Assembly (NCBI RefSeq): GCF_035594765.1
Contig: NC_085841.1
Span: 225,773,326 to 225,837,325, forward strand
DNA from: Anolis carolinensis
Taxonomy: Eukaryota
Direction of reading: 5' to 3'
DNA length: 64,000 nt
In this document: positions 2,620-59,452 of the stretch, piece after piece
Numbering within the stretch: position 1 is the first letter of the stretch
Layout of the letters: every line of letters starts with the position of its first letter
The notes under the pieces: generated by a model
The model's input: the letters and a program-made list of their open reading frames with translations, nothing else
Database searches by the model: none
What the model was told of the DNA's origin: nothing
Translations under genes and position numbers: made by a program

Positions 2620-3575
2620 AAAGAATCCTAGAGAGAATATATTAATCAAATCAGCAAATAATCAAATCTGCAAAAGTGAAACCCACAAATGTGGAGGGTC
2701 ACCTGTATTTTTAATCAATGTTTTATTAAGAGCAATTCACTAAGTTCAACACAGACGCAGGTACTTTGTCAAATTCACATAGCAAACACTAGGATATGGC
2801 AATCTTGGGCCCATTTTACAACTTAAAACTACTATAGTACATTCATGTTCCCTAACGACAGAATTTCCGATAAGTGTGACAATCGAAGTTCTGGACAAGG
2901 ACAATGCTACCGTATAGAAATCTTGCACATGCTCTCACTGCAGTTATGGTCCATTGAGTTCAAAGGTGTCTACTGTGAAATACGTGCATACATTTTTGCA
3001 ATATCTGTAAGTAAATGTTTTTAAAGTTGCTGAGAAACTGGAAATCTACAAGCAAGCAACCCAAGAAGTATGAGGAACATCTATGTAAAGTAGCCGAAAT
3101 TACCTTCAATCTGTGCTTGAACTCCTTTATGCACTGCTTTATTACAACCTCAGGGAAGGATACACCAGCATATTTTTGATTCTGATGGACTTGGAAGCTT
3201 TTCATCTATTGCACAGCTACTCATACTAACCCTGTGATGCCTTGGATATTTTATATAAACTGAGGCATTTCGAAGATGCATCTGTGCATGAGATTTGAAA
3301 ATTGTAAAAGCCATTCCAAAAGACTGAGTCAATTTAGATGCCCTCAGATGTCCTAAACAATAGGGTTTAAATGTAAATATTCTACCCCCTCAATTTTATT
3401 TGTAATCGTTCACTGGAATGGTTAAACAAGTTAGCATAGCATAAACCTTTTAGAAAAAAGTGAAATGAAAACTGAGTTTTTTTTAAATTTTAAAAAAGGT
3501 AGAAAATAGAAGTTCCCATCCCACCACCATTTCTTTTTTGTTTTGTTTTAAAATCTGTGAAAAGATTTAACTTAC

Positions 3576-4607
3576 CAAGTAGACCTGTCCCCAGTAGAGG
3601 GTTAAGTAGCTGTGGCACCACAGAGTTATTGTTGAGTTTAGCTGGACCAGATGTGCTCCCAGCACTATTAGATATGCTCAGCAATGTTTCTGCCATTGAC
3701 ATCACTGCTGTCCCACCAAGTGTTGAGACAGACAGTGCTGCCACTGTGGATGATGTAGTGGCTGTGGTAGTGGTAGCCTGGGAGGAGGTTGCTACTGAAA
3801 CCTCTGGATGGTTAGCAGTGCTGCCCGATGTAGAGTTCAAAACACCTCCCAACAGCTGGGGATTCAAGGCCATTAGTCCTGAGGCCCCAGGGATAGCTGG
3901 GAGGAACAGGGGGTTTGAAGCCGTGTCTGTGCCTGAAAAGTTTGGGAAAGGGTTTCCCAGGGGGTTGGTTAACAGGGTCTCAGCTCTGTTGGTATCGGAC
4001 TGACTGCTAAGCAAGTGATCGGATGGTGGGGCGGTCATCTGTGACCCTGTGGGCACAGGGTTGTTTTGCGGTTGCGGTAACAGATCTGAGATGGACAGAT
4101 TGAAAGGTGCTAAGGGGAACATGGCTGCTGTTTGGGCTTGGTTCTGGAGAAGAGCTGCTAGCAGCTGAACATGAACAGGTTGCAGCACCTGCCCATCCAC
4201 ATCACCGGAGAGCAAAGCTAAAGCAGCATTTACATTTGGGTTGAGAGAACCTAAAGGATTGAGGTTGACCTCAGACTTGCCTTCTCCTGTTGAAGGCTGC
4301 AGTATATTTAATAGATTCTGGTTTAGGATGTGCTGCTGATTCACTGGCAAAGAGATAGGTAGCGAACTAAAGAGGTTTGGATTCAAAGAGTGCTGAAGAT
4401 TGTTGTTTGAAGTGCTGTTCTGTGGAAAATGTAGGGCATGTTCATGACCAACGAAAGAAAAGTCATTCCCAAGAGGGAGCTGACTATGTAGTGGGTTTCC
4501 AGCTGCAGTTGTGACTATGACTCCATCTTGCAGAAGAGACGTTGTCTTGGTGATGGCAGGCTGACTGGTGCCAGCTATAGCAGTGGATGATGGTGGTCCT
4601 GCCCTTC
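3576..4607 (-). CDS. MBD5: MBD5 coding exon, long form (1032 nt); short form ends at internal GC donor 4281 (327 nt)
   Basis: ORF 3490-4632; acceptor tttgcag|GA, distal donor CTT G|gtaagt at 3575, internal donor GAA G|gcaagt at 4280; [24 protein letters not shown] matches MBD5. Confidence 0.95.
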
Positions 4608-6939
4608 CTGCAAATAAAAATAGCTGTGTCAATAAGAGTAATACACACTGAACATGCTGTTCATACCATTGGGAAGAAGCCTGATAGAAGAGGCATTACT
4701 TGAAAACATATGTTGCCTTTTAAATTACTGTATAGCAATATTACTTACCTTAGAGAAAAGCTACTCAAATCAGTGGTCATCTCCAGGAAAAATTAACAAT
4801 TGTTTCCAGCAGCCACAAATTTAGTCTGAGAAGTACTTTCCTAGAATGCCCCAAAATGCATGTAGAAACAGAAAATCCATCAAACTCAAACACAATCTTC
4901 TTCAAAAGATAACCACTGAATGGGCATTCTGCTTTGCTGTCAAGGGGGCTGATATTTAAGCTACTTATTAATTGCTATAAGAGCAGGAATTGATAATGAT
5001 TTCAAAGGGAATGATGAGAAATATGAGAAAAGGCGTATAGTTAATATTTTATATCATGACATTATTTAAGAAAGCAACTCCAACAAGTCATTGTATTTCT
5101 TCTTGGGCATACAGTATATACAGCGATGGGATATGTGGAATGTGTAAATAGTATGGAAAGATAAGAGAGATTATAAGAGTAAATAAATTCTTTTCTCAAG
5201 ACTGCCACCAAGTGGCTTGATTTACATGGAAAGTAATGAATTATCAGAGGGCAGAACATGAATGAGTGTGTGAGATTCCATCTTTATCTTCACCTTTTTT
5301 GGGAAGGCACACATTACTTCTTTTGCTTAAGGATATCCAGAGGGCTTCACGGATGACCTCAAGCTTGGCTACATTTAAATCAAGCTAGAAATCACCTATG
5401 CAAAATTACTCTGCTTCATACACACAGATTTCTGCTGGCAGATAGACACTACTTACATAGTCACTTCTTTCACTTCCTTGACACCTAAAGAATGTTCCTA
5501 AACATTTTCTTTTTCAATGTTTTCATATTTGATTTATAAGCCCTGAAGTCTGAAAATATGTGTTTTTCTACATCTCCTTGATTGATAGGTACTTTCATTT
5601 GAGGTAATGTAAATAGCATGCAAACTAAGTGTTGTTTGTTGAGCCAGGGGATGCTGCTCCTAAAACAGAGAGCTTTGAAGAGCATTTCTGTGTGTTAACG
5701 TAGCAGAACAGGGCAATTTCCGTAGATAAAAATGTAAATATAGAAAGTGGAGGTTAATTTGATGTCAGCAATGCATTATTTTATTTTTCTAATAAGAGCT
5801 GGCAAACTGCTGAGCAAAGAAAGCATCAATCACAGTTTTGTGCTTCTTCACAATCAGTGCGAAACTGCACTGGGTAGATGAAGCTGAAGTACACACTAAA
5901 TTCAGTCCTCTCTATTATTACAACAACTCCAAATCGAACCTAATGCAAAGATGCTTCATCTTCAATTAAGCCTAATATGAGAAATCTGTAAGGTTGATGT
6001 AATCCAATGGACAGCTTAGAAACACAGGGCACATACATACATTTTGAGTTGGCATAGGAAAATGTGGGTAGAATACACAGAAGCCTTATATTCATTCTAT
6101 ACCACTCTATTTCTATCCCCTCTTTCTCTTAAAATTAAAACTTAAAGCAGCTAACAGTATCAAAGAGCCACTAAAGTTAAGAGGAAAATGCATAAACTAA
6201 TTGGATCTTGCTGGCTCAAGTCTACTAGTTGATATTTCTTTAGCCTTTATAAATACCAGAAGAAAGCCACTTTTAGCATCGGACTTTCCTTCTCAACCAA
6301 AGCTCAGTGGCCAAGATGTACCTAAGTTATTTATCTCTCCTCTGAAAGCGTGGAAGAAGTTATTGTGCTCAGGTCAAACTAAAATGGAAACGATATTTGG
6401 GAAATCTGACTCAAAACACGATAACACAGAACTAAACTCAGTTCTAAGTCTGAATGAACATCACAAAAAGTAAAACATACCTACAAAATTAAACATTCCA
6501 GACTGATTGTCTAATTACTGCTTTCCAAAGCAAACAAGACAAAAGATTTGATCAGATGGCAGTGGCAGCAACTACTTACTGAAAGAAGAACGATGTAAAT
6601 CAAGCTCAATAATATCAGTGACATCAAGCCATTCAACCATTAATATTTATTGATTGGAAATATTTCTATCATGAATATTTTATTCCTACATCCTCAAAGG
6701 GACTTATCACAGATTATGACAATTTAATCATACAAGGAAATGTATCGTATGTTGATGGCAAGATGTCCAAAAGATATGTTGGAAAAGATACGTTAGTCGT
6801 ATTATACATAAGAAAAACATCCAAAGTCCATATTAAGCAACTAAAATGTGTGTAAGCTTTCAGTATCTTAAGATCTTTATCAGGCAAAGTGTTGCAAAAG
6901 CAGATGGGGAAAGAAAACAAATCTGTTTCGATGTTGAAG

Positions 6940-14130: not shown

Positions 14131-16422
14131 TATGGAGGATGGGTTCAATGAAATACTTTTGATCTACTACCTAGTACAACACTACTTTTTTTACTGGGCA
14201 GTGTTTCAATGCCAAAATATAAAAATAGCATTTGTGTTTTATAGCTTGGTGATTTTAGGACTTTATACTGCTGCCTCACAAACCCAAACAGGCCAAAAGC
14301 AAACAAAATATATGTAGCATATACAGTATTAGGAAAAGCTTTCTTTTCCTGGACAATGTGATTTTTGTCCCCAGCTATATATCTGAAAGGCAGTAAAATG
14401 CATACCCACATCTTTCCGAAGATTAGTCCAGACACAGTTGTCAGAAGCATCTGGCTCAAAAATCCTATTACAAAATCAAAAATAGTATGCAAAGAGGCTA
14501 AAAAAAGTGTGTTTACTTATAGATAAGGAAGAGAAGTGCAACCTGCTGTTTTCTCCAAAAACAGAAAATGCATAATTTCTCATAATTGCTTCTCATAATA
14601 CTCTGCTTCACTGGGCTTTGTTTGGGCACCGGTAAACATTTAAACTTTTCAGAATTTTCAAGGGGAGAATGAAGTTACTGCCTTCCAAATGACAATTTTG
14701 CCACCCAATTTCCCTCAAGTCCCCAAATTTCTAGCACTAAAATCATTCACATCTAGAACTTCTGCATTTGCTGTATTTGCATTCCCCAGGTCAATTTGCC
14801 GGCTCCTTTTCTTTGGATGTCTAAATTGTATTTCTATAAGCTCAACAGAATTTTTGTTTTTGCAATGCTAGAAATATGGGAAGCAAAGGAAAATTTGTGT
14901 TCAATTTAAGATGTTTTAAGCATTTGTTTTGCTATGTTTTAATCTTGTAATTTGTATTGTGCTTGAATTGTACATCAAATTGTACATTATTATAATAAAA
15001 TTTCACGAGGAGACAAATTCTTATTTAGTGGGAAATATCCTCATTGAGTCCTCCCCTTGTAGCTTTAACACTGAGAATTTTTGAAGACATCATTGAAAAA
15101 AACCCATTAAAAATGGTTACGGTTAACTGTACTATTTTGTGAAGAAACATAAATTGAATGATTATATCTATGCCCAGTGTTCTAAATGAAACAGCTCCAT
15201 CTTGAAGGAATTACATATATATGCTGTCAAGTGGCAAACAGAAAACTTGAAAGTGTAGACTTGAAACAAAATATTCAGTACACCAACCATCTTCAAGCAG
15301 AACCCCTATAGTCCTGCCTGGGATTTAGAGAAGGACTGGAGTGAGAGGTTTCAGGAGGCAAAAACATAAATTATATGTCCCTGTCCCCAGAAGCACATCA
15401 GTTGGATTTTTAAAAATGGACTGCTTCATGTCTCCTGTCCAGACATGTCCTAACCAAGAAACCTGTTAGGCAACTTGAACAATCACCTCTGTTCCCTCTC
15501 CAACTTTTCATCCTCCTGTTTCCATTTAACGCTCAAATGTTCTTTTTCATCACTGAGAAGACTTTGTCTTATCTGATTATCAGAAGTGCTCTATCCCCTT
15601 TCTTTTCCTTTTTATGTACCTCGTGAGTCACAGGTATGCAGAAATCACTCTTCTGTTGCCACTGCCTTCACTTCACTGCCAAACTGATAGGCAGAGGGCA
15701 ATTACATTCAATATTACAAGGAAGGACAATGCAAATGCTGAAAATGATCATTCCAAAATGATGGAAAACTGAAATCAAAATTAATACATTTGTCTTAGAA
15801 ATTGGATGTAGAACTTTAACAACAGAGGAGAAATAGATGTTTATTTGCATCTGAATAAGGCCAAAAATGAAAACACCTACAAATTGTTTTCTCCACTAAT
15901 TGTTCCCTTTAACAATTATTAATCCTCCTAGTGTTCCATATTTGACACATGGAAGTAGTGAAATGATTTTTTTTTGTTTTAAACCACAGTGCCCTACTCA
16001 AATTCAGGTAGGTAGGGGGGGTGATCATTTTCCATCCTTTGAGTATGTGATTATGAGTAGTGATTCCATGTCAGAAAAAGGCAAGTACAGAATAAGGATT
16101 GTAGTTATTAATGAATATTACTGGTTGGACATAGGGTAGGACAGAAATATTTTAAATAAAATAAACTAATAGAAGGAATAAAGATGAAAATTTCTATGTT
16201 ACTTTCTTACACAGGCAAAAGGAAGTATTTTAATGTTACTACAATCTGGCAACTCATTCTGTAGAACATATCTAGCTCTTCCTTGTTTTAAAACTGTGTA
16301 TTTGGTGATGCTATCAGATTGCCAAAAACAACATATTCATGTTTCCAAAGAAATATATAGAGAAACACCAGGCATATTATGATTCATATTTTTCAGGGAC
16401 TAACGTCAGAAAAAATACTTAC

Positions 16423-18555
16423 CTGTTTCAGGACTAGTCTGATTGCAACTGCTCACAATGCTGTTTGGTATCACTGGTGTAGTGGGTGCTTGGATCCGCG
16501 ACTGGGTGGGGTTCGGATGTAATGAATTTCCTAAAGCCATTCCAGATTGATTGAGTACCCCACAATTTCCACTAGCCTGCATCTGATTTATTAAACCTGC
16601 AAGATGGTTGTTTGGGCCAGGGCTAGAACCATGGCCAAAGTTAGTGTTTGAATTCTGGCAGTGCATATTTTCCCCTCGTAAAGGTAAATCATGTGCCAAT
16701 GGGTTCTGAAGAGAGCCAGTGTTCATGTTAGTTTCTGTAAAATGCAGCTGGTTAGCAGAGCAAGGCAAAACAGTATTTGAGCTCACACAACCAGAAGTAC
16801 TATTGCTGCTCATATGAGAACTTTGATAGCTCATGGACTGAAGTAACTGGGACATGGATGTAATGGGAAATGAACCTTGGTTCTGCTTTCTTATCAAATC
16901 CGGTCCCGATTTAGGCGCTCCAGAACTATCCAACTGAGTATGCCTAAGCAAACTCAACACTGTAGTGGTTGGTGGTTTTCTTTTCCTCAAAGGGTCTTTC
17001 TGTTGAGACATCAGTTTATCTCGTAGTGCTGCTCGACCACTTTGCCCTTCACTTGATGGCAAAAGCATGTTGGCAGTAGGAGGAAACATGGTGTTTAAAG
17101 TGCTGTGTCCATCATTGCTGCCACTACTAGCAACAGTTCCAGAATTGCTACTGCTGTTGCTATTGTTNNNNNNNNNNNNNNNNNNNNNNNNNNNNNNNNN
17201 NNNNNNNNNNNNNNNNNNNNNNNNNNNNNNNNNNNNNNNNNNNNNNNNNNNNNNNNNNNNNNNNNNNNNNNNNNNNNNNNNNNNNNNNNNNNNNNNNNNT
17301 TTCATGGGCCCACTTCCAGCAGATGCAGATGGGAAAACTGCATTGCTTGGAGGATTTAATACATTACTGATTCCAGCAATCAATGTGTTAGGGATGTCCT
17401 TGTATTGATGGAGGCCATCAGTCTTTGTAGATGGACTTGATGGCATAGATGGTCTTGGAGACCCTATTGTTGACCTTGGTGATCGAGGAGGAACTTTAAT
17501 ATTACTACAAGATGACTGTGGTCCTATTGGCGGCATCATGAAATTTCCATGATCAGATGATGTGGAAGATGAGCGTGATCTTTGGGGAGAAGCCTCAATC
17601 CTTCCAATTCCAGATGCCATCATATGAACTGGAGATGTTACTGGTGAGGGGGAGAGAGAGGTGGAAGTAGAGTGCTGAACTCTTTGCAGATGACCCCCAT
17701 GGTTTGTGTGACCAGGTTTTACAGTTGGCAAAGGGAGATTACTTGGTAGAGGAACAACAGCTGGAGGCATGCTTACATTCATCACAGGTACCTGAGAGTG
17801 GATATTTGAATGATAAGTACTTGGATTAATGATAACAGGATTCTGGTTCACTGGTTTGCTAGGAATGGGGTCAAGAATGCCAAGTGGATCCTTTTCTGAT
17901 GTTAATGGCTTTTTCTGAAGAGCACATGATGGAGGTGGCGGTGGAGGGCCTTGAGGTGGTTTGTGGTGAAACATTGCTCGTGGAATTTCCATACTAGTTG
18001 AAAAATTACACATGGGCTTTTTCATTACAGGACTTTTTGTGGTCAGGGTTGGGGAAAGAGGTATATTAGTCCTTCCAGCCATTGCACAAGATGACTGCAC
18101 AGGAGAACCATGTAGCATTACTGAAGGTGGGGACAGAGGGGTTCTGTTCATGTGAACAGGACTAGAGTTGGGTGCTCCATGAAAACTGGAATTACTCCTT
18201 GTGAAAATATCTGGACTTCCAAGTGGGTCTGTCCTAGGAGAGATTGAGCCATCTCCATATATTTGTGATCCTGATGAAGCTGGACTAGGCATTCCTCCAT
18301 GGCTGCCACGATATGGAGATTTCTGTCCAAGTTCATTACTGCCCAATCTCTGCCTTGGATAGACAGAATGAAGTTCTTGTTGCTGGCTTGCAGTCATCTC
18401 TTGCACATATAGCCGGCCCATGGCATTCGAGGCCCCCATCATCAACTTGAATGGAGTTTTACATTCTGGCATCACAGAGTTAGTAATTCCTTCATGTGAT
18501 TTATTCCTTATTGATCTTGGAGTTGCTGCTCGTGAAGGTACTAATGGAGTTGCAC
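16423..18555 (-). CDS. MBD5: MBD5 large Pro/Ser-rich coding exon (2133 nt, includes a 132-nt N block)
   Basis: ORF 16406-18592; acceptor cttcag|GT, donor ACA G|gtaagt; [14 protein letters not shown]...NQTSPET is recognisably MBD5; phase 1 to 1. Confidence 0.97.
17168..17299. other. 132-nt run of N inside the large MBD5 exon
   Basis: Directly visible; both edges fall on codon boundaries of the minus-strand frame. Confidence 0.99.
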
Positions 18556-19012
18556 CTGAAGTAGAGTAAATGAGAGTTAGTATGTCTTGCAACTAAATGA
18601 AACATCAGAATTACATTTTTTTTAGACAAAACTGCACCCAGGTATTATATGTGCATGTGACATACACAATTCTAAAAAGTTTCCAGGTAGAGGAGCTTAT
18701 ATATACTGTACTCACTATGCTGTTGTGGCTAGTGACTAGAACCAATGCACAAATTATATTTTTATCTTAAGAACATGACTTTCTAAGATGAAGGATCTTT
18801 AAAAAGGAGCCAAGATGGGTGGGCAAAAATGAACAGGATTTACAATATCAGGACTCATTTTGAATGTAACACAATTAATTTTCAACATTTTAGAAAGTAT
18901 GGTATGTTTGCACAAAAATAGAGCAGTATACTGTATTAATATCTTTTATAGTTACACACATATGCCCAATCTGAATCTTTAACATAAGAAGCATATTTTG
19001 ATTTTCTAATTA

Positions 19013-37318: not shown

Positions 37319-38804
37319 CATCAATTTTAGTTATTATCGCACTTTAATATACTGTTTTCTTTACAGGTCATTAAACTAAATATGTAGATTCCTGTCTCAT
37401 TGAAGTACTCAACCCAGTATAGAGCTAGAATACAAAGAAACTCATTTTGTCTACATACCTAACAAAATCAACTGTCAGTTTGATCCAAAAACCACTGAAT
37501 CAGATCTGCTATTGGAACATCAATGCTTTTTTTCTTACAATATTCATGACCATTTTCCAGTTTTCAACTATATAATATAAAAACCAATTTGAAAAAAAAT
37601 GCAGTCATGCAGAAAGAACACAAAGAATTAAAGAGTATAAAATTATATCAAATTGCCTTGCTTTGCACAAGGAGCACTAATAGTGCAGGGAAATAATAAG
37701 TCATTCAGATCGAGCCACTGTGCAAGAATACGATATATCAAAAAAATATAGAGGGATAGTAAATTAAACTTGTAAATTATGCTTTTGTGCTAAAGTACTA
37801 GGGCATGTGACCAAGCTATATTTAGAAACATAGGATATTTTCCTGGAGTGCTGTTCTTAAAGTTGTTTACTGAAACATTCAGGAAATAATCAACAATTTC
37901 ATGAAAATTCTGCCATTAAAGAGTACTCTTTGCATAATTGGTAACCTATTAATGCAAAATTAACTATTGAGAACCTTCTTGAAACTCTGTATTAGTGTAA
38001 ATGAGTTCATTTTATCTAACTATCATGAAGTTGTTTACAAAAAGATTCCAGTGGAGCTTTACCTATTGAATGCCTAATGCTGCAGTCATACAACTTATCC
38101 CTCAGAAGCTCCCAATGAATTAGACTGAAAAAAATAAGCAAAGTCCAAAACTCTTCCCTGTACCAATAAGCAGTGCAGAAAAGTCCATCTGATTTTGTCT
38201 TTAATAACTGAAGTATCCAGGAGCAGAAGTCAAGGGCAGTAATGGCCACAGAATCATTACAACTATTTACATGTATTTGCATTTCATAAATAAATATGAA
38301 TAATTGTGAATTTTTGGGAAAGATCTCCATATATGATGCTAATTCTGGTTCTATCTTATATGAATTTAAGAATTCACTCCTAAATCGATACAAATACTGC
38401 ACAATACTTAAGTTAAGTTAAATTAAGGAGGCAAAAGACAGTAAGCATTGCAAATGGAACTCTGTAGTACATTTAGTCCTGAAAAATAAAGGGTGAAAGG
38501 AATTTGTGTGGAAGAACTGAGTATCCAGAAATAAAAATGCACAATCATTTGCAATGCTCTCAATGTCAAAACCAGGAACATTACTTATTCCAATTACCTC
38601 CATTATCAAACAAATTAAGGACATTATCACACATGTCCTAAAATGGGTTCTTCCATGGTAAGCCCATCTTGGCTAAGACAGGAACATGCCTGTCTAGCAC
38701 CTTTTCTTATTGAACAAATCCTTTTTGCAGGCGCTTTGAGCTTGTTTACCGCATGTGCAGGAGGGTGGCTCCTCCTCATCTGTGCTGTCTCCATCTTCAT
38801 ACAC

Positions 38805-39815
38805 CGTTGTCGTCTCACTCATTCAGTCGTTTTCAACTCTTTATGACCTCATGGACCAGTCCACGCAGAGCTCCCTGTCGGCCGTCACTGCCCCCAGTTC
38901 CTTCAAGGTCGAGCCAGTTACTTCAAGGATACCGTCCATCCATCTCGCCCTTGGTCGGCCTCTCTTCCTTTTTCCTTCCATTTTCCCCAGCATCATGATC
39001 TTCTCCAAGCTTTCCTGTCTCCTCATGATGTGGCCAAAATACTTCAACTTTGCCTCTAATATCCTTCCCTCCAGTGAGCAGTCGAGCATTATTTCCTGGA
39101 GGATGGACTGGTTGGATCTTATTGCGGTCCAAGGCACTCTCAGGATTTTCCTCCAGCACCAAAGTTCAAAAGCGTCTATCTTCCTTCACTCAGCCTTCCT
39201 TATGGTCCAGCTCTCGCATCCATAGGTCACTATGGGGAATACCATTGCTTTCACTATGCGGACCTTCGTTGCCAGTGTGATGTCTCTGCTTTTCAGTATT
39301 TTATCGAGGTTGGCCATTGCTCTCCTCCCAAGAAGTAGACGTCTTCTGATTTCCTGGCTGCAGTCTGCATCTGCAGTGATCTTCGCGCCTAGAAATTATT
39401 ATTATTATTTGTTATTTACAGCATTTATATTCCGCCCTTCTCACCCCGAAAGGGACTCAGGGCGGATCACACTACACATATAGGCAAACATTAAATGCCT
39501 TTTAACATAGAACAAAGACAAACAAACATAGGCTCCGAGCGGGGCTCAAACTCATGACCTCCTGGTCAGAGTGATTCATTGCAGTTAATTGCACTGGCTT
39601 GCTCTCCCGCCTGCGCCACAGCCCGGGCTGTCACGGCCTCCTCGTTTTCTCCCTCTATTTGCCAGTTGTCAATTGGTCTGATTGCCATGATCTTGGTTTT
39701 CTTGATGTTTAACTGCAACCCAGCTTTTGCACTTTCTTCTTTCACCTTGGTGATAAGGCTCCTCAGCTCTTCCTCGCTTTCGGCCATCGGAGTGGTATCA
39801 TCTGCATACCTAAGG
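38805..39815 (-). mobile_element. RTE-BovB LINE 3' fragment interrupted by a SINE
   Basis: Minus-strand peptides LRYADDTT-like, AESEEELRSL...AGLQLNIKKTKIM and LKYFGHIMRRQESLEKIMMLGKMEGKRKRGRPRARW. Confidence 0.93.
39396..39628 (-). mobile_element. tRNA-derived SINE with L2-type tail
   Basis: 5' GCCCGGGCTGTGGCGCAGGCGG (A box), B box gagtttgagcc, tail ...gagtccctttcggggtgagaagggcggaatataaat-(aat)n. Confidence 0.88.
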
Positions 39816-42989: not shown

Positions 42990-43810
42990 ACCCCATGATG
43001 CGCTTTATGTCCTGGTGCCGTTTGCAGGATGATGGACCATGGGTGATGGGATATGTAGTACTTTCAATCGCTACGATTCCCACAGACCACTGCGATGCCC
43101 ACCAGTGATGGAACTGGACCAAATTTGGCACACAGATGGGACATGCAGTACCTTCACTCGCTTCTTGAGACCACAGCAACTGCTACATATGACAGAACTG
43201 AACCAAATCTGGTATATATATCCCAAATGACACACTTTATATGTTGCAGCAGTTTGGGGGAGGATGGACCAAGGACGATGGGATTTGCAGTACCTTCATC
43301 CAATTCACCTCCCACAGGCCACTGTGATTCCCATGAATGATGAAACTGTACCATACTTGACACACAGGTGCAATGTGGCCCCCTTTACGCCCTGGTCCAG
43401 TTTGGCGCAGGGTGGGCCATGGATGATGGGATTTGCAGTACCCTCACCCAATTCACCTCCCATGGACCACTGTGATACCCATGAAAGATGAAACAGTACC
43501 ATACTTGACACACAGGTGCAATGTGACACAATTTATGTCCTGGTGTGGTTTGCAGGAGAATGCACCAAGGATGATGGGATTTCCAGTACCTTCATCCAAT
43601 TCACCTCCCACAGACCACTGTGATGCCCATGAATGATGAAACTGTACCAAACTTGACACACAAGTGCAATGTGGCCAGCTTTAAGTCCTCCTGCCGTTTG
43701 AGGAAACAACTGACCAGGGAAGATGGGATTTACAGTACCTTCACTCACTTCCTCAGACCACTGCAACCCACACCAATGACTGATCAAGATCAAACTTGAC
43801 ACATTGCGTC
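42990..43810 (+). repeat. ~148-bp minisatellite array inside the Helitron
   Basis: gatgggattt(g/c/a)cagtacc recurs at 43277, 43425, 43573 and 43722, with diverged units upstream. Confidence 0.88.
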
Positions 43811-44521
43811 CCCATGACCTACTTTACATCCTGGCGCTATTTGGAGGGGGATGGACCATGGACTTACATATGGGAGTTGTAGTTCACCCATACCAATTGA
43901 AGACAACTGACACTGGATCGAGACTAAACTTGGAACAAAGGCAAACAATTCCATTCTCAAATAACCCGGGCACCGCCGGGCCCCCAAGCTAGTAATGTAT
44001 AAAGTTAATAGAAGAGGTACATATACATGACCGACTCAGTTCACTACTCAAATCTTAGAAACTCTCACCTACAGGACAACTAATAAACAAACTTTTCTTT
44101 ATATTGACCATAGAGTTGTACTAGAAAACTAGGAGAATATTTTTTAATCAAATCTGCAAAGTCAAACCTGCCAGTGTGGAGAGATGGCAGTATACTACCC
44201 TTGGGGATAGCAAGTAAACATACCTTTTAAGACCTTTTAAAATATATATTTGAAATGAAGTGCAAGTAATTTGAATTTTTGTAACAGACAGCAAAGATAC
44301 AGGTTTGTTTTGTTTTTTTTCCAAACGGTTACCATTACATACCTGCTTCATTTATTCCAGTAACCACTCTATATGGCAAGGGATACTAAATGGTTAGTGT
44401 CAATTTTTCAAAATGTATGGTTACACTGGGATCTGAAACTGGGCCTTCCTGAATTTCTGTCCAGTATTTAAAATGTTTCTTTATGCTGGCTCTCAGTTTA
44501 AAGCAGAGTTTCATTGTATAT

Positions 44522-45752
44522 AAGACTGCTGTTTACTTGCTTTTTCTTGCTGTTCAGTCAATTTAAAAAATGTATCACTTGTAATTTATTTTTTTTAATA
44601 TCAATGCACGGTACTTTGTTTTACATCGTGAGGACAAAATATTTCTGTTTGGAAGGATAATGTTAAAATGTTTCAGTGGATTGCTGGCTGAAAACAGGTC
44701 CTTAAAAATATCAAAATGATATTATGGGCCAGAAACATAGATAGACCCATTCAAATGTATGAATGGGAATCAATTTGGAACAAAAAAATTAAATATACGT
44801 ATTCAGTAGACATGAAAGAAAATTGGCTTAAACTTATACATAGGTGGTACTTAACACCTAAAAAAATAGGTCATATATATAAGAACGTAAACAATAAATG
44901 CTGGAGGTGCAAAGCCCAAACAGGATCTTACTTCCATATGTGGTGGAAGTGTAAGAAATTGGACAGATTTTGGACTACAATTTTGGAGGAGAGCAATGAC
45001 ATATTAAAGACAAAATTCGTAAAAAAAAACCCCGAATTACTCCTGTTGGGCCTCTATGACCCCAAGGACAGAATTGACTCTAATACCGACAAACTTTTCA
45101 ACTTTTTTATTACCGCAGCAAGGCTCCTAATAGCAAGACTCTGGAAATAGACGCAAGCACCGACGAAAGAACAATGGTTGGACAAATTGATGGAAATTAA
45201 GAACATGGACCAATTATCTTTTTTGATCAGGAGAAGTAACGGCAATACACTGAAAGCTACTGACTGGTCTAATTTTGAGGACTACTTAAGGAATAAATAT
45301 ATAAAGGAAAAATGATTGACTTAACGAACTGAGAAGAACAAAATCGGAAGTCAAACCACCTACCTCCCCAACCCCACCTCCCCTCCCCTATAGTGTTCAC
45401 CCCCTCACCTTTAAACCCTAAACCCATTCTCTCCCCCTACCCTATTCATGTGTATTCTCCAACTCATCCCCATCCCTAAAAGTGTTACTGTTTGTTTTCC
45501 TTGTTTGTCTCTTTTTTTGAGGAAAATCACAATAAAAATTATTTCAAAAAAAAAAAAGACTGCAGTTTACTTGCTTTTTCTTGCTGTTCAGTCAATTTAA
45601 AAAATGTATCACTTGTAATTTATTTTTTTTAATATCAATGCACGGTACTTTGTTTTACATCGTGAGGACAAAATATTTCTGTTTGGAAGGATAATGTTAA
45701 AATGTTTCAGTGGATTGCTGGCTGAAAACAGGTCTTTAAAAATATCAAAATG
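44522..45752. repeat. 197-bp direct repeats (44522-44718 and 45556-45752) flanking the L1
   Basis: aagactgc.gtttacttgc...aaaaatatcaaaatg on both sides; two mismatches seen. Confidence 0.95.
44719..45555 (+). mobile_element. 5'-truncated L1 LINE (ORF2 C-terminus with CCHC knuckle, 3'UTR, polyA)
   Basis: KLIHRWYLTP...CWRC...HMWWKC; internal TAG at 45148-45150, then the frame continues (PTKEQWLDKL...DWSNF) to ~45315; AATAAA at 45531, A tail 45546-45557. Confidence 0.93.
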
Positions 45753-46155
45753 TCTGCCAACTTAACTGGAATAGACATGGAAGCATACTTTTTTCTCTTT
45801 TATGCGTGTAGTTCTGTCTGTAATGTAAAATTGGTAGAGAAAATAAAAAAATTGAATGATACAACTTAATATCTTGCATGCTTAAATTGTTAAACTACCT
45901 TGCTTCATCAATAGTATTGTCATTTTATTTGTCAAATACAGTATGTATTTGCAAGATGAAATTGAGTGCTCCCCTTCAATTTTACATTTCAAAGGTACTC
46001 CATGACTGAAAGTTGAGAATCTTTGGTTTATAGCTATGCATATATTGAGAACCAGTCTAGTGTTATGATCAGCATTGGTCTGGCCTTAAGAGTTCAAGTC
46101 CCCATCAAATCATGAAAATCACTGAGCAAACTTGGGTTAATCATTATCACTTAGC

Positions 46156-46265
46156 AGGAGGAGGAGGAGGAGGAGGAGGAGGAGGAGGAGGAGGAGGAGG
46201 AGTTGTAGAAGAAGGAGGTGGAGGGGGAGGAGAAAAAGAAGAAGGAGATGGAGAAGGAGAAGAAA
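46156..46265. repeat. (GGA)n/(GAA) purine-rich microsatellite abutting an L2-type tail
   Basis: Directly visible. Confidence 0.93.
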
Positions 46266-46267
46266 AA

Positions 46268-46360
46268 GACTTTATTTATATTTCGCCCTATCTCCCCGAG
46301 GGGACTCAGGGCGGATTCCAACAAACAAAAAAGGCAAACATTCAGTGCCTGAGTACAACA
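46268..46360 (-). mobile_element. L2-type 3' tail fragment (similar at ~48085-48280, 54030-54200, 58965-59365, 62335-62790)
   Basis: tttat...cgccctatctccccgaggggactcagggcgg stem-loop next to a microsatellite tail. Confidence 0.65.
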
Positions 46361-48280
46361 ACAAATACGAATATAATAGCCCAAAATAACCCCACTTATG
46401 AAAACGACATCATACAGATTTCATGAGAATCAAATCAGAAGAAAGAGAAATGTCCACTACCTTGAGCACACTGTTGAAGTGAATGTATATACCTATATAA
46501 CCCACTACTTAATCCAAAATACAACAAAAGATTTTTGTTAAAAAGTTACAGAGTACACTTCATATAGGTAGCAGGATTCACACAAGAACCTCTGCAATTA
46601 TATCATGAAAAATGTCTAGACATCAACTATGATATACACATAGATCATAGTTCACATGTAAGCTTAGTAAGCAACAAATTGTATGAAGCCACATACTGGT
46701 CCAAAAAGTTTAGGAAACATACAAGACATATAATATTATAATTTCTTCCCTTTAATGCCTTGAACTTTAACATGAAAACATTTTCAGAATTTAGAGTACA
46801 GATGAAAAGAGATTCATTTTCAACAAGAAAAAGAACTCTGTTCTGTTCAGCTTATAATAGTAGCATTAGCATACTTTAAAAAGACTAGCATGTGTTCAGA
46901 TCCTCTTTGGTATTTTGACATTAAAAAAGAAATACAATGATGGACTCCATCTGGATTCCATTACTTTTCTCCATATCAGTGAACCTACCCTGCAGCATGC
47001 TGTGTACCCTAAAAACCTGCCCCAGATGGCTCAGAAACACCCAGGTACAAAGTTCTGGCATTTCAGCAAGCTGCATTGAGCAGAAAGAGAAGAAAAACCC
47101 AGATTCATTGTTGTTATATATCAAAGTACATTGTTGAATCATCACCCAAATTTACACTATGGTTGAAGTCCTATGAAATATATTAATATTATTTATCTGA
47201 AAGAAGACATGTACACAGGAAAAATGTAACACACTTCAAAAAATATTAAATAATTAGAAAACCACCTATATACACCCAGTGGCCAACTGGGAGTATATAG
47301 GAAGTGACCTGGCAAGCTATTTAGGATTTTGTACTGATTAAAAGACGAGAATGAAGTTTAGTATTTCAAAGACAGCCAGCACAGTGCTTTCAAGATACAA
47401 ATAATAAATACATACATGAATGATCCACCAAGTACTCAAGCTGCTGAATTTTCCACTAGTTGCAGCTTACTAACTAGGCACAAGGGCAATCTTATAAATA
47501 GCTCATTGCAACACTGTAATGATGAGGTTGCTTACTTGGGATGATACCCCACTGAGCACAGATTCAATCCACACAATGGTACTCATTTTGTATTTTTAAG
47601 TCACCTGTCGACTTAATGTCAACCCTATGAATTTCATAGGGTTTTCTCAGACAAGGAATATTCAGATCTAGTTTTGCCAGTTCCTTCCTCGGAATATAGC
47701 CTACAGCACTTTGTATTCTTTGGTGGTGTCCCATCCAATTATTAACAAAGGTAAGTTGGGATTTGGTGCCTTTAAGATATTTAAGCCCCTCACTCCCAAG
47801 TTTTTTTTGTTTGTTTTTTCATGTCAGGAGCAACCGTAGTTGCTTCTGGAGTGAACAATGCTAAAATTGAGCTGTTAGAAAAGACAGGTGCTGTCATATT
47901 AGTAGGTCAAATTATTTCAGTTGAAAAGAAATTCTCCAAAATTACAATATTTGAAAATCCCCTTAACTGCAAGATTTTGATCAGTATCTGACTCATAAAA
48001 TCAAAAGCAATATAATTTATCCCTTATCTCAAATTAACTACTGGGCTTTGACAAGACTACTAGTAAAATACATGTAGCATGTAAGTAAAAGTAAGTAAAG
48101 TAAAAGTTTATTTGTATACCGCCCTCTCTCCCAAGAGGGACTCAGGGCGGTTTCCAATATAAAATCAGCATAAAACATTGTACAATAAAACACTGAAACG
48201 CTATAAAACGCTATAAGAATACAAAGAAAAAAAACATAACAATTGACTAAAACAATCACATAAACAGAAACAATATAATC

Positions 48281-57129: not shown

Positions 57130-58310
57130 TAGATAATTAAGTGCTTTACTCAGGAAATGAAAAGTCAAGAGAAAATGGGGTGGCTTTAATAGGGAGGCGA
57201 GATGTAGCAAAAGCAGTGAATTAAAATGGCAGTGTCTGGCTGAATAATATTAGTAAGACTTCAGGGAAAGCCTATTAATAAAATCATAGTTCAGGTTCAT
57301 GCTCCAGAGGCAGAAATTAAAAGATTGTATGTTGGAGACCGGGGAAAAATTGACTACACACAAACATAGGATTTTTTGCTAACTGGAATGAAAAAGTAGG
57401 CAGGAGAGCAGAATCAAGACTGTAGAAAAATTTGGCCTAGGATCAAGAAATATTTATTATTTATTATTTATTTATAGCATTTATATTCCGCCCTTCTCAC
57501 CCCGAAGGGGACAGGGCGGATCACATTACACATATAGGCAAACATTCAATGCTTTTTAACATAGAACAAAGACAAACAACATAGGCTCCGAGCGGGGCTC
57601 GAACTCATGACCTCCTGGTCAGAGTGATTAATTGCAGTTAATTGCACTGGCTTGCTCTCCTGCCTGCGCCACAGCCCGGGCCTAATAGAGGGAGAAAACG
57701 TGGAAGCAGTGACAGACTTTATATTTCTAGGCACAAAGATCACTGCAGATGCAGACTGCAGCCAGGAAATCAGAAAACGTTTACTTCTTGGGAGGAGAGC
57801 AATGGCCAACCTTGACAAAATAGTGAAGAGTAGAGACATCACACTGGCAACGAAGGCCTGCATAGTTAAAGCAATGGTATTCCCCGTAGTAACCTATGGA
57901 TGCGAGAGCTGGACCATAAGGAAGGCTGAGCGAAGAAAGACAGACACTTTTAAACTTTGGTGCTGGAGGAAAATCCTGAGAGTGCCTTGGACCGCAAGAA
58001 GATCCAACCAGTCCATCATCCAGGAAATAATGCCCGGCTGCTCACTGGAGGGAAGGATATTAGAGGCAAAGATGAAGTATTTTGAGCACATCATGAGAGG
58101 ACAGGAAAGCTTGTAAAAGAACATGATGCTGGGGAAAATGGAAGGGAAAAGGAAGAGAGGCCGACCAAGGGCAAGATGGATGGATGGTATCCTTGAAGTG
58201 ACTGGCTTGACCTTGAGGGAACTGGGGGTGGCGACAGCCGACAGGGAGCTCTTGCGTGGACTGGTCCATGAGGTCACGAAGAGTCGGAAACGACTGTGTG
58301 ATTGAAGAAG
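57130..58310 (+). mobile_element. RTE-BovB LINE: decayed endonuclease-region fragment (57130-57451) joined through a SINE to the RT C-terminal and 3' fragment (57681-58310)
   Basis: VEAVTDFIFLGTKITADADCSQEIRKRLLLGR...YGCESWT...WCWR...; upstream piece resembles ENGVAF / IVQVHAP / WNxKVG / GKFGLG motifs of the RTE endonuclease. Confidence 0.9.
57452..57680 (-). mobile_element. tRNA-derived SINE with L2-type tail
   Basis: Near-identical to 39396-39628, with B box GAGTTCGAGCC. Confidence 0.88.
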
Positions 58311-59452
58311 TGTATGAAGCAATATGCAGACACTACCTATATTGCTTTATGCACATTATACTATAGTCATCTAGCATTTTTTTTCATTATAGGGATAGAT
58401 GTGGAAGATAGTACCACTCTTTTACACTGATACAAAGTTAATGAGTATTTATTAATGATAATTAATGTGATTGTGGGCCATTTTACACATGCAGTAAAAC
58501 CTGGAAGTAACTGAGATAAAAGGGGGGTGGCTAAATGATGTTTGGGGAAAGTGTAGGCAGGGTTAACAGCTGAAGACCATGTGTTTAAAAAATGTGCTTA
58601 AAACTCAATTCCACCCTTAAATGCATGCCTTCACATGACTGTATATTTTTGTAGTCATGCAAAACACTTGACTTCCTTTCCATCCCTCTGTGTGGACTGC
58701 TTCAGTGTATGTGTTTTAAAAGCCTAAAACAGCTGATCAGGCTGTCAAAAATGGAGCCATGTACACACAGGTGGCTAAAGGAAAGCATAATTGGAAAGCA
58801 ATTAGAACTCTCTCCAACCAATTTTTTCTTATAATATTAAACTGAGCTTGAATTAACAGTTGGGTGAAGAGAGAGGGAAGAAATCTACTTGTATGTACAT
58901 TGGGATCTCTGCATGTGTGCATACAAGGTCCAGCGTATCTCAGAGATTTTTTAAAAATGAAATGAAATGTAATGAAACTTTATTTATAGCCCGCCCTATC
59001 TCCCAAAGAGACTCAGGGCAGCTTACAACAAAATAAACAATTGCAAACATTCAATTTCTACTGCAGTACATAAAACAAAAAAAAAACTCAATAAATTATA
59101 AAACAACTGAAATAAGCAAGACAATGCATAGCACAAACCACATCATTATAAACATATTAAATCCTTAAAACTTATTAAAAGCCTCTAAAATTTGGCTAAA
59201 ATAGTTGTAAGAGACATGGTGAACAGTGAATTAACAGTTGTTAGCAGCTAGGTGAGGATGCATATAGATGTACGTAATCCTCCTCCTCTCCATAAGCTAA
59301 ATTGCATAGATGTTTTTTCAAAAGATTTTTGAAGGAGAGGAGAGAGGAGGCCATTTTTAATTCTTTAAACAAATAAACAATGAAAAACTATATATAGGCA
59401 GTCCTCGAGTTACAGACATCTGACTTACAAATGACTCATAGTTAAGAAGCAG

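What the first reader, a model, noticed from the sequence alone, without database searches (positions are those of the whole stretch)
44522..45752. L1 insertion with a 197-bp target-site duplication
Seen: an 837-bp polyA-tailed L1 3' fragment sits exactly between two 197-bp direct repeats of unique intronic DNA (44522-44718 and 45556-45752) with only two visible mismatches. The repeat starts at T|AAGAC, resembling an L1-endonuclease nick, and the A tail runs straight into it. Established: L1 TSDs are usually about 7-20 bp and very long TSDs are rare. Inference: second-strand cleavage or priming occurred about 200 bp away, roughly one nucleosome repeat, so one retrotransposition event duplicated host DNA. 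The last ATG of the repeat is in frame with L1 MILWA, which suggests microhomology-guided 5' joining.
Basis: partly seen in the sequence, partly recalled or inferred. Interest (0 to 1): 0.78.

Follow-up and report, generated by a model that had tools for sequence, protein, structure and literature searches.

The report
L1 insertion with 197-bp target duplication
A short, dead piece of an L1 jumping gene in a lizard genome is flanked by two near-identical 197-bp copies of ordinary host DNA, which is best read as a rare but already known outcome of L1 insertion in which the two DNA strands were opened about 200 bp apart.

Summary
44522-44718 and 45556-45752 are a 197-nt direct repeat with 2 mismatches, with no third copy in the window.

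The 837 bp between the copies is the 3' end of an L1:
- It matches human ORF2p residues 1072-1208 of 1275 (E 2.6e-12).
- It has a 3'UTR, an AATAAA signal and a 12-A tail that runs into copy 2.

Contigs from other individuals partly confirm the structure:
- One contig bridges the polyA/copy-2 junction.
- Contigs break exactly at the repeat borders.
- The repeat is at about 1-2x single-copy depth, so it is not a repeat family.
- Longer L1 copies share AATG with the end of copy 1, a 4-nt microhomology.
- Another L1 copy has a different 3' flank, so the 197 bp is not L1 sequence or a shared transduction.

Best reading (about 0.8): one target-primed reverse transcription event, with the second-strand break or priming 193-197 bp downstream.

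No empty allele was seen, so the decisive test is missing. Depth patterns hint that the insertion may be polymorphic.

TSDs over 100 bp are a known minority outcome of L1 insertion, mostly with 5'-truncated inserts (PMC5223499, PMC2912911). The nucleosome idea cannot be tested from one case.

This is a clean natural example, not a new mechanism.

The parts
44522..44718 (+). Copy 1 of the 197-bp direct repeat (5' target-site duplication). It is continuous with the upstream flank. The diagnostic bases are T at 44530 and C at 44701.
   Evidence: Contigs of X1, X5 and X12 run from 44100 into the repeat up to 44560 and carry T at 44530 (records 1, 17, 9).
44715..44718 (+). AATG microhomology shared by the end of the target copy and the L1 sequence at the truncation point. 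This makes the TSD 193-197 bp and the L1 piece 837-841 bp.
   Evidence: loose ends. In X1, X5 and X9, contigs of longer L1 copies match the window from 44715 onward and continue 5' with an open ORF2 reading frame.
44719..45315 (+). 5'-truncated L1 ORF2 C-terminal coding part, including the Cys-rich CWRC...HMWWKC segment. It has an in-frame stop at 45148-45150 and the natural stop at 45313-45315.
   Evidence: phmmer to human LINE-1 ORF2p residues 1072-1208 of 1275, E 2.6e-12. Pfam zf-RVT E 0.032, below the cut-off.
45316..45545 (+). L1 3'UTR with the AATAAA polyadenylation signal at 45531-45536.
   Evidence: Contig depth here is close to single-copy depth, which indicates a low-copy young subfamily.
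45546..45557 (+). 12-A tail. The last two A's (45556-45557) could belong either to the tail or to the repeat.
45556..45752 (+). Copy 2 of the 197-bp direct repeat (3' target-site duplication). It is continuous with the downstream flank. The diagnostic base is A at 45564. The reference has T at 45735, but X1, X5 and X12 have C there.
   Evidence: X5 record 23 bridges 45468-45594 with no mismatch. X1, X5 and X12 contigs join the repeat end to the downstream flank.
44518..44525 (-). Inferred first-strand (bottom-strand) nick site, 5'-TCTT/ATAT-3', with the cut between 44522 and 44521. The T's could prime on the poly(A).
   Evidence: for the sequence. That it is a nick site is inference from the TPRT model. 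On the top strand it matches TT/AAAA at 4 of 6 positions.
45749..45756 (+). Inferred position of the top-strand break or priming end in the empty site (...AATG/TCTG). It does not resemble an L1 endonuclease site.
   Evidence: Inference.

Best explanation
This is a single L1 retrotransposition event by target-primed reverse transcription. It produced a 5'-truncated, poly(A)-tailed L1 3' fragment flanked by an unusually long target-site duplication of 193-197 bp. The inferred steps are as follows. The L1 endonuclease nicked the bottom strand at 5'-TCTT/AT. The T's primed reverse transcription on the L1 poly(A). The top strand was opened, or an existing 3' end was used, about 197 nt downstream instead of the usual 7-20 nt. 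That 3' end, ...AATG, annealed to the complementary four bases of the unfinished cDNA. This fixed the truncation point and primed second-strand synthesis. Fill-in of the 197-nt single-stranded stretches then gave the two copies. The anatomy, the L1 identity, the microhomology, the low copy number of the 197 bp and the presence of the structure in other individuals are shown. The order of events and the cause of the distant second break are inferred.
For: The repeat is exact in extent and 99% identical, with sharp borders and no third copy in the window. The insert is an L1 ORF2 C-terminus plus 3'UTR, AATAAA signal and A tail. The tail abuts copy 2 and the truncated 5' end abuts copy 1. Both outer flanks are joined to a repeat copy as they would be in an undisturbed site, which is the geometry of a TSD. 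In Logan contigs of four individuals from four studies: X5 record 23 bridges polyA to copy 2 without a mismatch. X1 and X5 contigs end exactly at 44718 and start exactly at 44715 and 45723, which are graph branch points at the repeat and L1 borders. The flank-linked T and polyA-linked A diagnostic bases recur. X1's shared-repeat contig has 19.2 depth against 11.6 and 10.7 in the flanks. No run shows high depth over the repeat. Longer L1 copies continue 5' of 44715 with ORF2 sequence unlike the repeat, and a sister copy has a different flank after its tail. So the 197 bp is not L1 sequence or a shared transduction. The AATG overlap has a chance expectation of about 1/256. It matches the known microhomology at 5' junctions of truncated L1 (PMC4245944, citing Zingler 2005). 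Long TSDs are a documented outcome. TSDs over 100 bp made up as much as 10% of HeLa events and reached 5.3 kb in repair-deficient cells (PMC5223499). A 1228-bp TSD was found for zebrafish ZfL2-2 in chicken cells (PMC2666801). Extremely long TSDs were tied to 5'-truncated inserts (PMC2912911).
Against: No empty allele or orthologous empty site was seen, so the single-copy ancestral state is inferred. No displayed contig bridges the copy-1/L1 junction with 31 or more letters on each side; its existence outside the reference rests on contig breaks. Repeat depth is near 1x rather than 2x in X5 and X12, and X12's contig runs through the 45752 border without a break. The nick site matches the L1 consensus at only 4 of 6 positions. 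Only one locus was examined.
Confidence: 0.8

Rival explanations
1. L1 cDNA was captured as filler during repair of a DNA break or a replication error that itself made a 197-bp tandem duplication. This would be endonuclease-independent or template-switch repair, not a staggered TPRT event.
For: The final structure would be the same. The second break site has no endonuclease-like motif, and the first site is only a 4-of-6 match. Microhomology at the 5' junction is also typical of end-joining repair. Models that use a pre-existing distant 3' end have been proposed for L1-linked duplications (PMC7058536, PMC5223499).
Against: The poly(A) tail sits exactly on a T-rich bottom-strand site with no missing or extra bases, as expected for endonuclease-primed TPRT. 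Endonuclease-independent insertions usually lack TSDs and often lack tails, which I state from established knowledge of those events. This rival differs from the best explanation only in who made the breaks.
Confidence: 0.1
2. The 197 bp was already a tandem duplication, and the L1 landed exactly at the junction of the two copies with no TSD of its own.
For: This was not excluded directly, because no empty allele was observed.
Against: It needs an insertion at one precise position out of hundreds, with zero target alteration on both sides. The copies differ at only 1-2 of 197 sites. The L1 piece is similarly young, differing from its family's contigs at about 3 sites in 837. That fits one event better than two.
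Confidence: 0.03
3. This is an assembly artefact. The reference assembler wrongly duplicated the 197 bp around an L1, or stitched two haplotypes together.
For: No single contig or long read spanning the whole 1.2 kb was available. Repeat depth is about 1x in X5 and X12.
Against: Other individuals differ from the reference at nearby sites (44399, 45735, 45949), so they are independent. They show the polyA/copy-2 junction directly (X5 record 23). They also show the same copy-specific T and A bases in the same contexts, and contig breaks exactly at the predicted borders.
Confidence: 0.03
4. The 197 bp travelled with the L1 RNA, as a 5' or 3' transduction or by a reverse-transcriptase jump onto host pre-mRNA.
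For: L1 transductions and template switches are known.
Against: There is no second poly(A) after copy 2. The L1 is truncated deep in ORF2, so a 5' transduction from a full-length source is impossible. Sister L1 copies have different sequence on both sides. The host gene's long ORFs are on the minus strand, so its pre-mRNA would give an inverted copy, not a direct one. A jump would also have to end exactly at the nick.
Confidence: 0.02

Closest known systems
Long (over 100 bp) target-site duplications at de novo human L1 insertions in cultured cells. These were reported by Gilbert 2002/2005 and Symer 2002, as summarised in PMC5223499 and PMC2912911.
   Same: The insert is a 5'-truncated, poly(A)-tailed L1. 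It is flanked by a direct duplication of unique target DNA far longer than the 7-20 bp norm, explained by a second-strand break or priming far from the first nick.
   Different: This one is a germline, naturally inherited copy in a lizard genome, from a low-copy non-mammalian L1 family. The human cases are engineered elements in HeLa, HCT116 or repair-deficient cells.
Long TSD (1228 bp) of zebrafish ZfL2-2 in chicken DT40 cells (PMC2666801), and the L-TSD class of PMC4245944.
   Same: It falls in the same category of target-site alteration (L-TSD, over 20 bp) for a vertebrate LINE.
   Different: Those belong to a different LINE clade (L2) and come from an experimental system.
Microhomology-mediated 5' end attachment of truncated L1 (Zingler et al. 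2005, cited in PMC4245944; Kojima 2010, PMC2912911).
   Same: There is a 4-nt overlap (AATG) between the target end and the L1 at the truncation point.
   Different: [quoted passage not shown] The combination seen here is therefore not a known rule, just one case.
L1-mediated large tandem duplications in tumours (PMC7058536).
   Same: A small L1 insert sits at the junction of a direct duplication with an endonuclease-like motif at the 3' breakpoint.
   Different: Those are megabase-scale and are thought to involve a break on a sister chromatid. This one is 197 bp.

Membership tests
L1 (LINE-1) insertion made by target-primed reverse transcription | Sequence homologous to L1 ORF2 and its 3' end | tested here: met
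   phmmer E 2.6e-12 to human LINE-1 ORF2p residues 1072-1208. The reading frame is open apart from one stop.
L1 (LINE-1) insertion made by target-primed reverse transcription | Poly(A) tail preceded by a polyadenylation signal at the 3' end | tested here: met
   AATAAA at 45531-45536 and a 12-A run at 45546-45557.
L1 (LINE-1) insertion made by target-primed reverse transcription | Flanking direct repeat of target DNA that abuts both element ends | tested here: met
   197-nt repeat with sharp borders at the tail and at the truncated 5' end.
L1 (LINE-1) insertion made by target-primed reverse transcription | Endonuclease-type target (top strand TT/AAAA) | tested here: inconclusive
   The site reads AT/AAGA, a 4-of-6 match; the bottom strand is TCTT/AT. 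The preference of this lizard L1 family is not known to me.
L1 (LINE-1) insertion made by target-primed reverse transcription | Empty site with one copy of the duplicated sequence in other individuals or species | tested here: inconclusive
   No joint skipping 1034 bp appeared in four runs. Short contigs cannot span the repeat, and no sister-species data could be reached.
Long-TSD class of L1 insertions (over 100 bp) | The duplicated DNA is unique host sequence, not part of the element or of a repeat family | tested here: met
   There is no other copy in the window. Contig depth is 1-2x single copy. Sister L1 copies have different sequence at both ends.
Long-TSD class of L1 insertions (over 100 bp) | Association with 5' truncation and junction microhomology | tested here: met
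   The element is truncated at about ORF2p residue 1070, with an AATG overlap.
L1 3' transduction | The transduced segment follows the L1 and ends in its own poly(A) before the TSD | tested here: not met
   Copy 2 runs straight into unique flank with no A run.

The most novel reading that the evidence does not exclude
The length of about 197 bp is not an accident. In this lizard, L1 second-strand cleavage or priming would have a secondary preferred distance of about one nucleosome repeat, so a whole class of 150-200-bp TSDs would exist that standard TSD finders, capped at about 30 bp, have missed.
Probability: 0.04. Interest if true: 0.65.

Novelty: new member of a known kind. Interest (0 to 1): 0.25.

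Why it matters
This is a clean, naturally inherited example of a long-TSD L1 insertion outside mammals. The L1 endonuclease-like nick site, the tail, the truncation point and a 4-nt microhomology can all be read directly.

Such cases show that the aberrant outcomes seen in cultured human cells also reach the germline. They also show that L1 can make small local duplications of host DNA.

Two practical points follow:
- TSD finders capped at about 30 bp would misannotate this element as lacking a TSD.
- The two 197-bp copies can recombine and delete the element, which mimics an empty site.

None of this changes the current understanding of L1 integration.

Tried and rejected
- **TSD baseline inside the window:** I scanned every A or T run of 8 or more for a flanking direct repeat of at least 12 nt within 8 kb. 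Only this locus was found, plus an internal echo of the same repeat, so there is no baseline. The first version of the script missed even this locus, because the mismatch at the ninth base broke the exact seed.
- **Rfam and tRNA scans of 43000-47000:** these were run to see whether the 197 bp is SINE-like. Only sub-threshold chance matches and no tRNA turned up.
- **Pfam on the ORF pieces:** this gave only a sub-threshold zf-RVT match. The comparison with solved L1 ORF2p sequences settled the identity instead.
- **Empty allele:** Read laying showed no joint. The runs are kept as short contigs that break at the repeat, so they cannot show absence or zygosity. Both read tools are capped at one call, so sister species and long reads could not be tried.
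- **Big protein searches:** I did not use them, because the L1 identity was already settled.
- **Rejected readings:** 3' or 5' transduction, a template jump to host pre-mRNA, an L1 landing in a pre-existing tandem duplication, and an assembly artefact. The reasons are given under the rival explanations.

Full report
**1. Observation**

The window holds a 197-nt direct repeat at 44522-44718 and 45556-45752. There are two mismatches: 44530 T vs 45564 A, and 44701 C vs 45735 T. The similarity ends abruptly on all four sides:
- Copy 1 is preceded by unique sequence (...TTGTATAT) and followed by L1 coding sequence.
- Copy 2 is preceded by an A run and followed by unique sequence (TCTGCC...).

A sensitive blastn (word size 7, E up to 10) finds no other copy of the 197 bp in the 64 kb. 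The 837-bp insert has no second copy in the window either. The repeat is AT-rich (30% G+C) and non-coding. It has no tRNA or Rfam match of note.

**2. What lies between the copies**

Translation from 44716 gives 144 codons ending in an in-frame stop at 45148-45150. A further 54 codons run to the natural stop at 45313-45315. The 144-residue piece aligns to residues 1072-1208 of the 1275-residue human LINE-1 ORF2 protein with E 2.6e-12. Pfam gives only a sub-threshold zf-RVT match.

A 3'UTR of about 230 nt follows. AATAAA lies at 45531-45536 and a 12-A run at 45546-45557. The insert is therefore the last approximately 0.84 kb of an L1, copied from a polyadenylated RNA and truncated deep in ORF2.

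**3. Evidence from other individuals**

One search found 16 runs of one coded organism that hold part of the stretch. All are kept as Logan contigs. I laid four of them, from four studies. The contigs are short and break at repeats, so they can show presence but not absence. They differ from the reference at nearby sites (44399, 45735, 45949), so they are independent of the assembly.

a. Outer junctions. Contigs in X1, X5 and X12 run from the upstream flank into copy 1 and carry T at 44530. They stop at 44560, exactly 30 nt after the diagnostic site, as expected for a 31-mer graph that meets a second path there.

b. Tail junction. X5 record 23 (45468-45594, no mismatch) bridges the L1 3'UTR, the tail and 39 nt of copy 2, including the A at 45564. 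This is direct independent proof of the tail/copy-2 junction.

c. Repeat borders.
- In X1 and X5 the shared part of the repeat is its own contig (44531-44718), ending exactly at the repeat/L1 border.
- A contig starts at 45723, 30 nt before the first base after copy 2.
- L1 contigs start at 44715. These are the branch points the A-L1-A structure predicts.

d. Copy number of the repeat.
- In X1 the shared contig has depth 19.2 against 11.6 and 10.7 in the flanks.
- In X5 it has 6.3 against 6.3 and 7.6.
- In X12 it has 16.7 against 15.5.
- Nowhere is the depth high, so the 197 bp is not a dispersed repeat.

e. Neighbours of other L1 copies.
- Contigs of longer L1 copies match from 44715 onward and continue upstream with sequence unlike the repeat that keeps the ORF2 frame open (...ETEIVTNS-MILWA...).
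- Another copy continues after its tail with a different flank (GCTGGAGC...). The 197 bp is thus neither part of the L1 nor a transduction shared with sister copies.

f. The second mismatch. 45735 reads C in X1, X5 and X12. So the second mismatch between the copies is a variant of the reference, and only one difference (T/A at 44530/45564) is common to all.

g. Empty allele. No joint that skips the insert was reported.

**4. The junctions**

Bottom-strand sequence at the start of the repeat is 5'-GCAGTCTT/ATATACAA. This gives a T-rich 3' end able to pair with poly(A). On the top strand the site reads AT/AAGA against the TT/AAAA preference described for human L1 (PMC2912911), a match at 4 of 6 positions.

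At the other end, the target's ...AATG and the L1's ...TTC-AATG-ATA overlap by four bases (44715-44718). The chance of an overlap of four or more bases is about 1/256. Microhomology at the 5' junction is a recognised feature of 5'-truncated L1 (PMC4245944, citing Zingler et al. 2005). The TSD is thus 193-197 bp and the L1 piece 837-841 bp. The inferred top-strand break (...AATG/TCTG) has no endonuclease-like motif.

**5. Mechanism**

The best-supported account is a single TPRT event whose second-strand break or priming end lay about 197 nt downstream of the first nick. The shown parts are the geometry, the L1 identity, the tail, the microhomology, the low copy number of the repeat and the existence of the structure in other animals. 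The inferred parts are the order of events and the cause of the distant second break. That cause could be a second cut by the element's protein, a cellular nick, or a replication or repair intermediate.

The copies differ at 1-2 of 197 sites. The L1 piece differs from the majority of its family's contigs at about three sites (44781, 45101, 45149). So both look equally young, which fits one event.

The L1 is antisense to the long coding ORFs of the window (16406-18592 and 3490-4632, minus strand). That also argues against a reverse-transcriptase jump onto host pre-mRNA, because such a jump would give an inverted copy.

**6. Rivals**

- Repair capture: L1 cDNA taken up at a repair-generated tandem duplication gives the same structure. 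It differs only in who made the breaks. The exact seating of the tail on a T-rich site favours TPRT (rival at about 0.1).
- Pre-existing duplication: a tandem duplication hit exactly at its junction needs a coincidence at single-base precision (about 0.03).
- Assembly artefact: this is contradicted by the independent junction contig and the copy-specific bases (about 0.03).
- Transduction or template jump: this fails on the missing second tail, the deep truncation and the different flanks of sister copies (about 0.02).

**7. What remains open**

The depth and graph patterns differ between animals. X1 fits two copies per haplotype. X5 shows the tail junction at about half the flank depth and no doubling of the repeat. 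X12's contig runs through the 45752 border unbroken, and its L1 contig at 44715 is the longer-L1 form, yet its other breaks still suggest a tail-to-copy-2 path.

Either the insertion is polymorphic, or the contig clean-up pruned the 26-word 5' junction path. LINE insertions in the green anole are reported to be mostly polymorphic at low frequency (PMC5389967), so polymorphism is plausible. I did not verify the organism myself. Other notes of this scan call it the green anole.

**8. Comparison with what is known**

- TSDs over 100 bp were seen in as much as 10% of recovered L1 events in HeLa cells. They became the majority, reaching 5.3 kb, in nucleotide-excision-repair-deficient cells (PMC5223499).
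- Extremely long TSDs came with 5'-truncated inserts (PMC2912911, discussing Gilbert et al.).
- A zebrafish L2 element gave a 1228-bp TSD in chicken cells (PMC2666801).
- L1-bridged tandem duplications occur in tumours (PMC7058536).
- Genomic surveys often cap TSD length at about 30 bp (PMC2912911), so natural examples are under-reported.
- Unchecked first-reader notes on this genome list L1 TSDs of 8, 18 and 20 bp, which fits the usual range.

This locus is therefore a new, well-preserved member of a known class. The nucleosome-spacing idea is a numerical coincidence until a genome-wide TSD-length distribution shows a mode there.

**9. Verdict**

- Observation: confirmed.
- Interpretation: supported in its core (one L1 event, long TSD, microhomology). 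It is unproven for lack of an empty allele, and unsupported in its nucleosome extension.
- Interest: low to moderate, 0.25.

Noticed in passing
window 45735 (also 44399, 45101, 45149): The reference base at 45735 (T) is replaced by C in all three other individuals that cover it, which removes one of the two mismatches between the repeat copies. At 45101 and 45149 every laid contig reads differently from the window. 45149 lies within the in-frame stop codon of the L1 piece.
   Followed up: partly
window 44100-44233: Contig depth is 3-14 times the single-copy level in all four runs, and a 1-nt insertion behind 44157 appears in most contigs. A dispersed repeat seems to end about 300 bp upstream of the finding.
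   Followed up: no
window 43250-43743: There is a tandem array of a 148-bp unit, 3.3 copies at 82% identity, in a locally G+C-richer stretch.
   Followed up: no
window 46156-46269: An (AGG)n/(AGAAGG)n purine-rich microsatellite lies about 400 bp downstream of copy 2.
   Followed up: no
window 16406-18592 and 3490-4632, minus strand: Two very long open reading frames (728 and 380 codons) lie on the minus strand. The first is interrupted by the masked N block at 17168-17299. Another first-reader note calls this gene MBD5. I left the N block untouched and did not verify the gene's identity.
   Followed up: no
window 57652-58322: Overlapping ORFs of 154 aa (+) and 142 aa (-) are present. The minus-strand product shares long identical stretches with the 156-aa ORF at 38755-39225 (+), so the two places look like inverted copies of one repeat family.
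   Followed up: no
window 45264-45557 (L1 3'UTR): The 3'UTR of this L1 is at about single-copy depth, with at least two near-identical sister versions in other individuals. One has a different 3' flank. This points to a very low-copy, recently active subfamily.
   Followed up: partly
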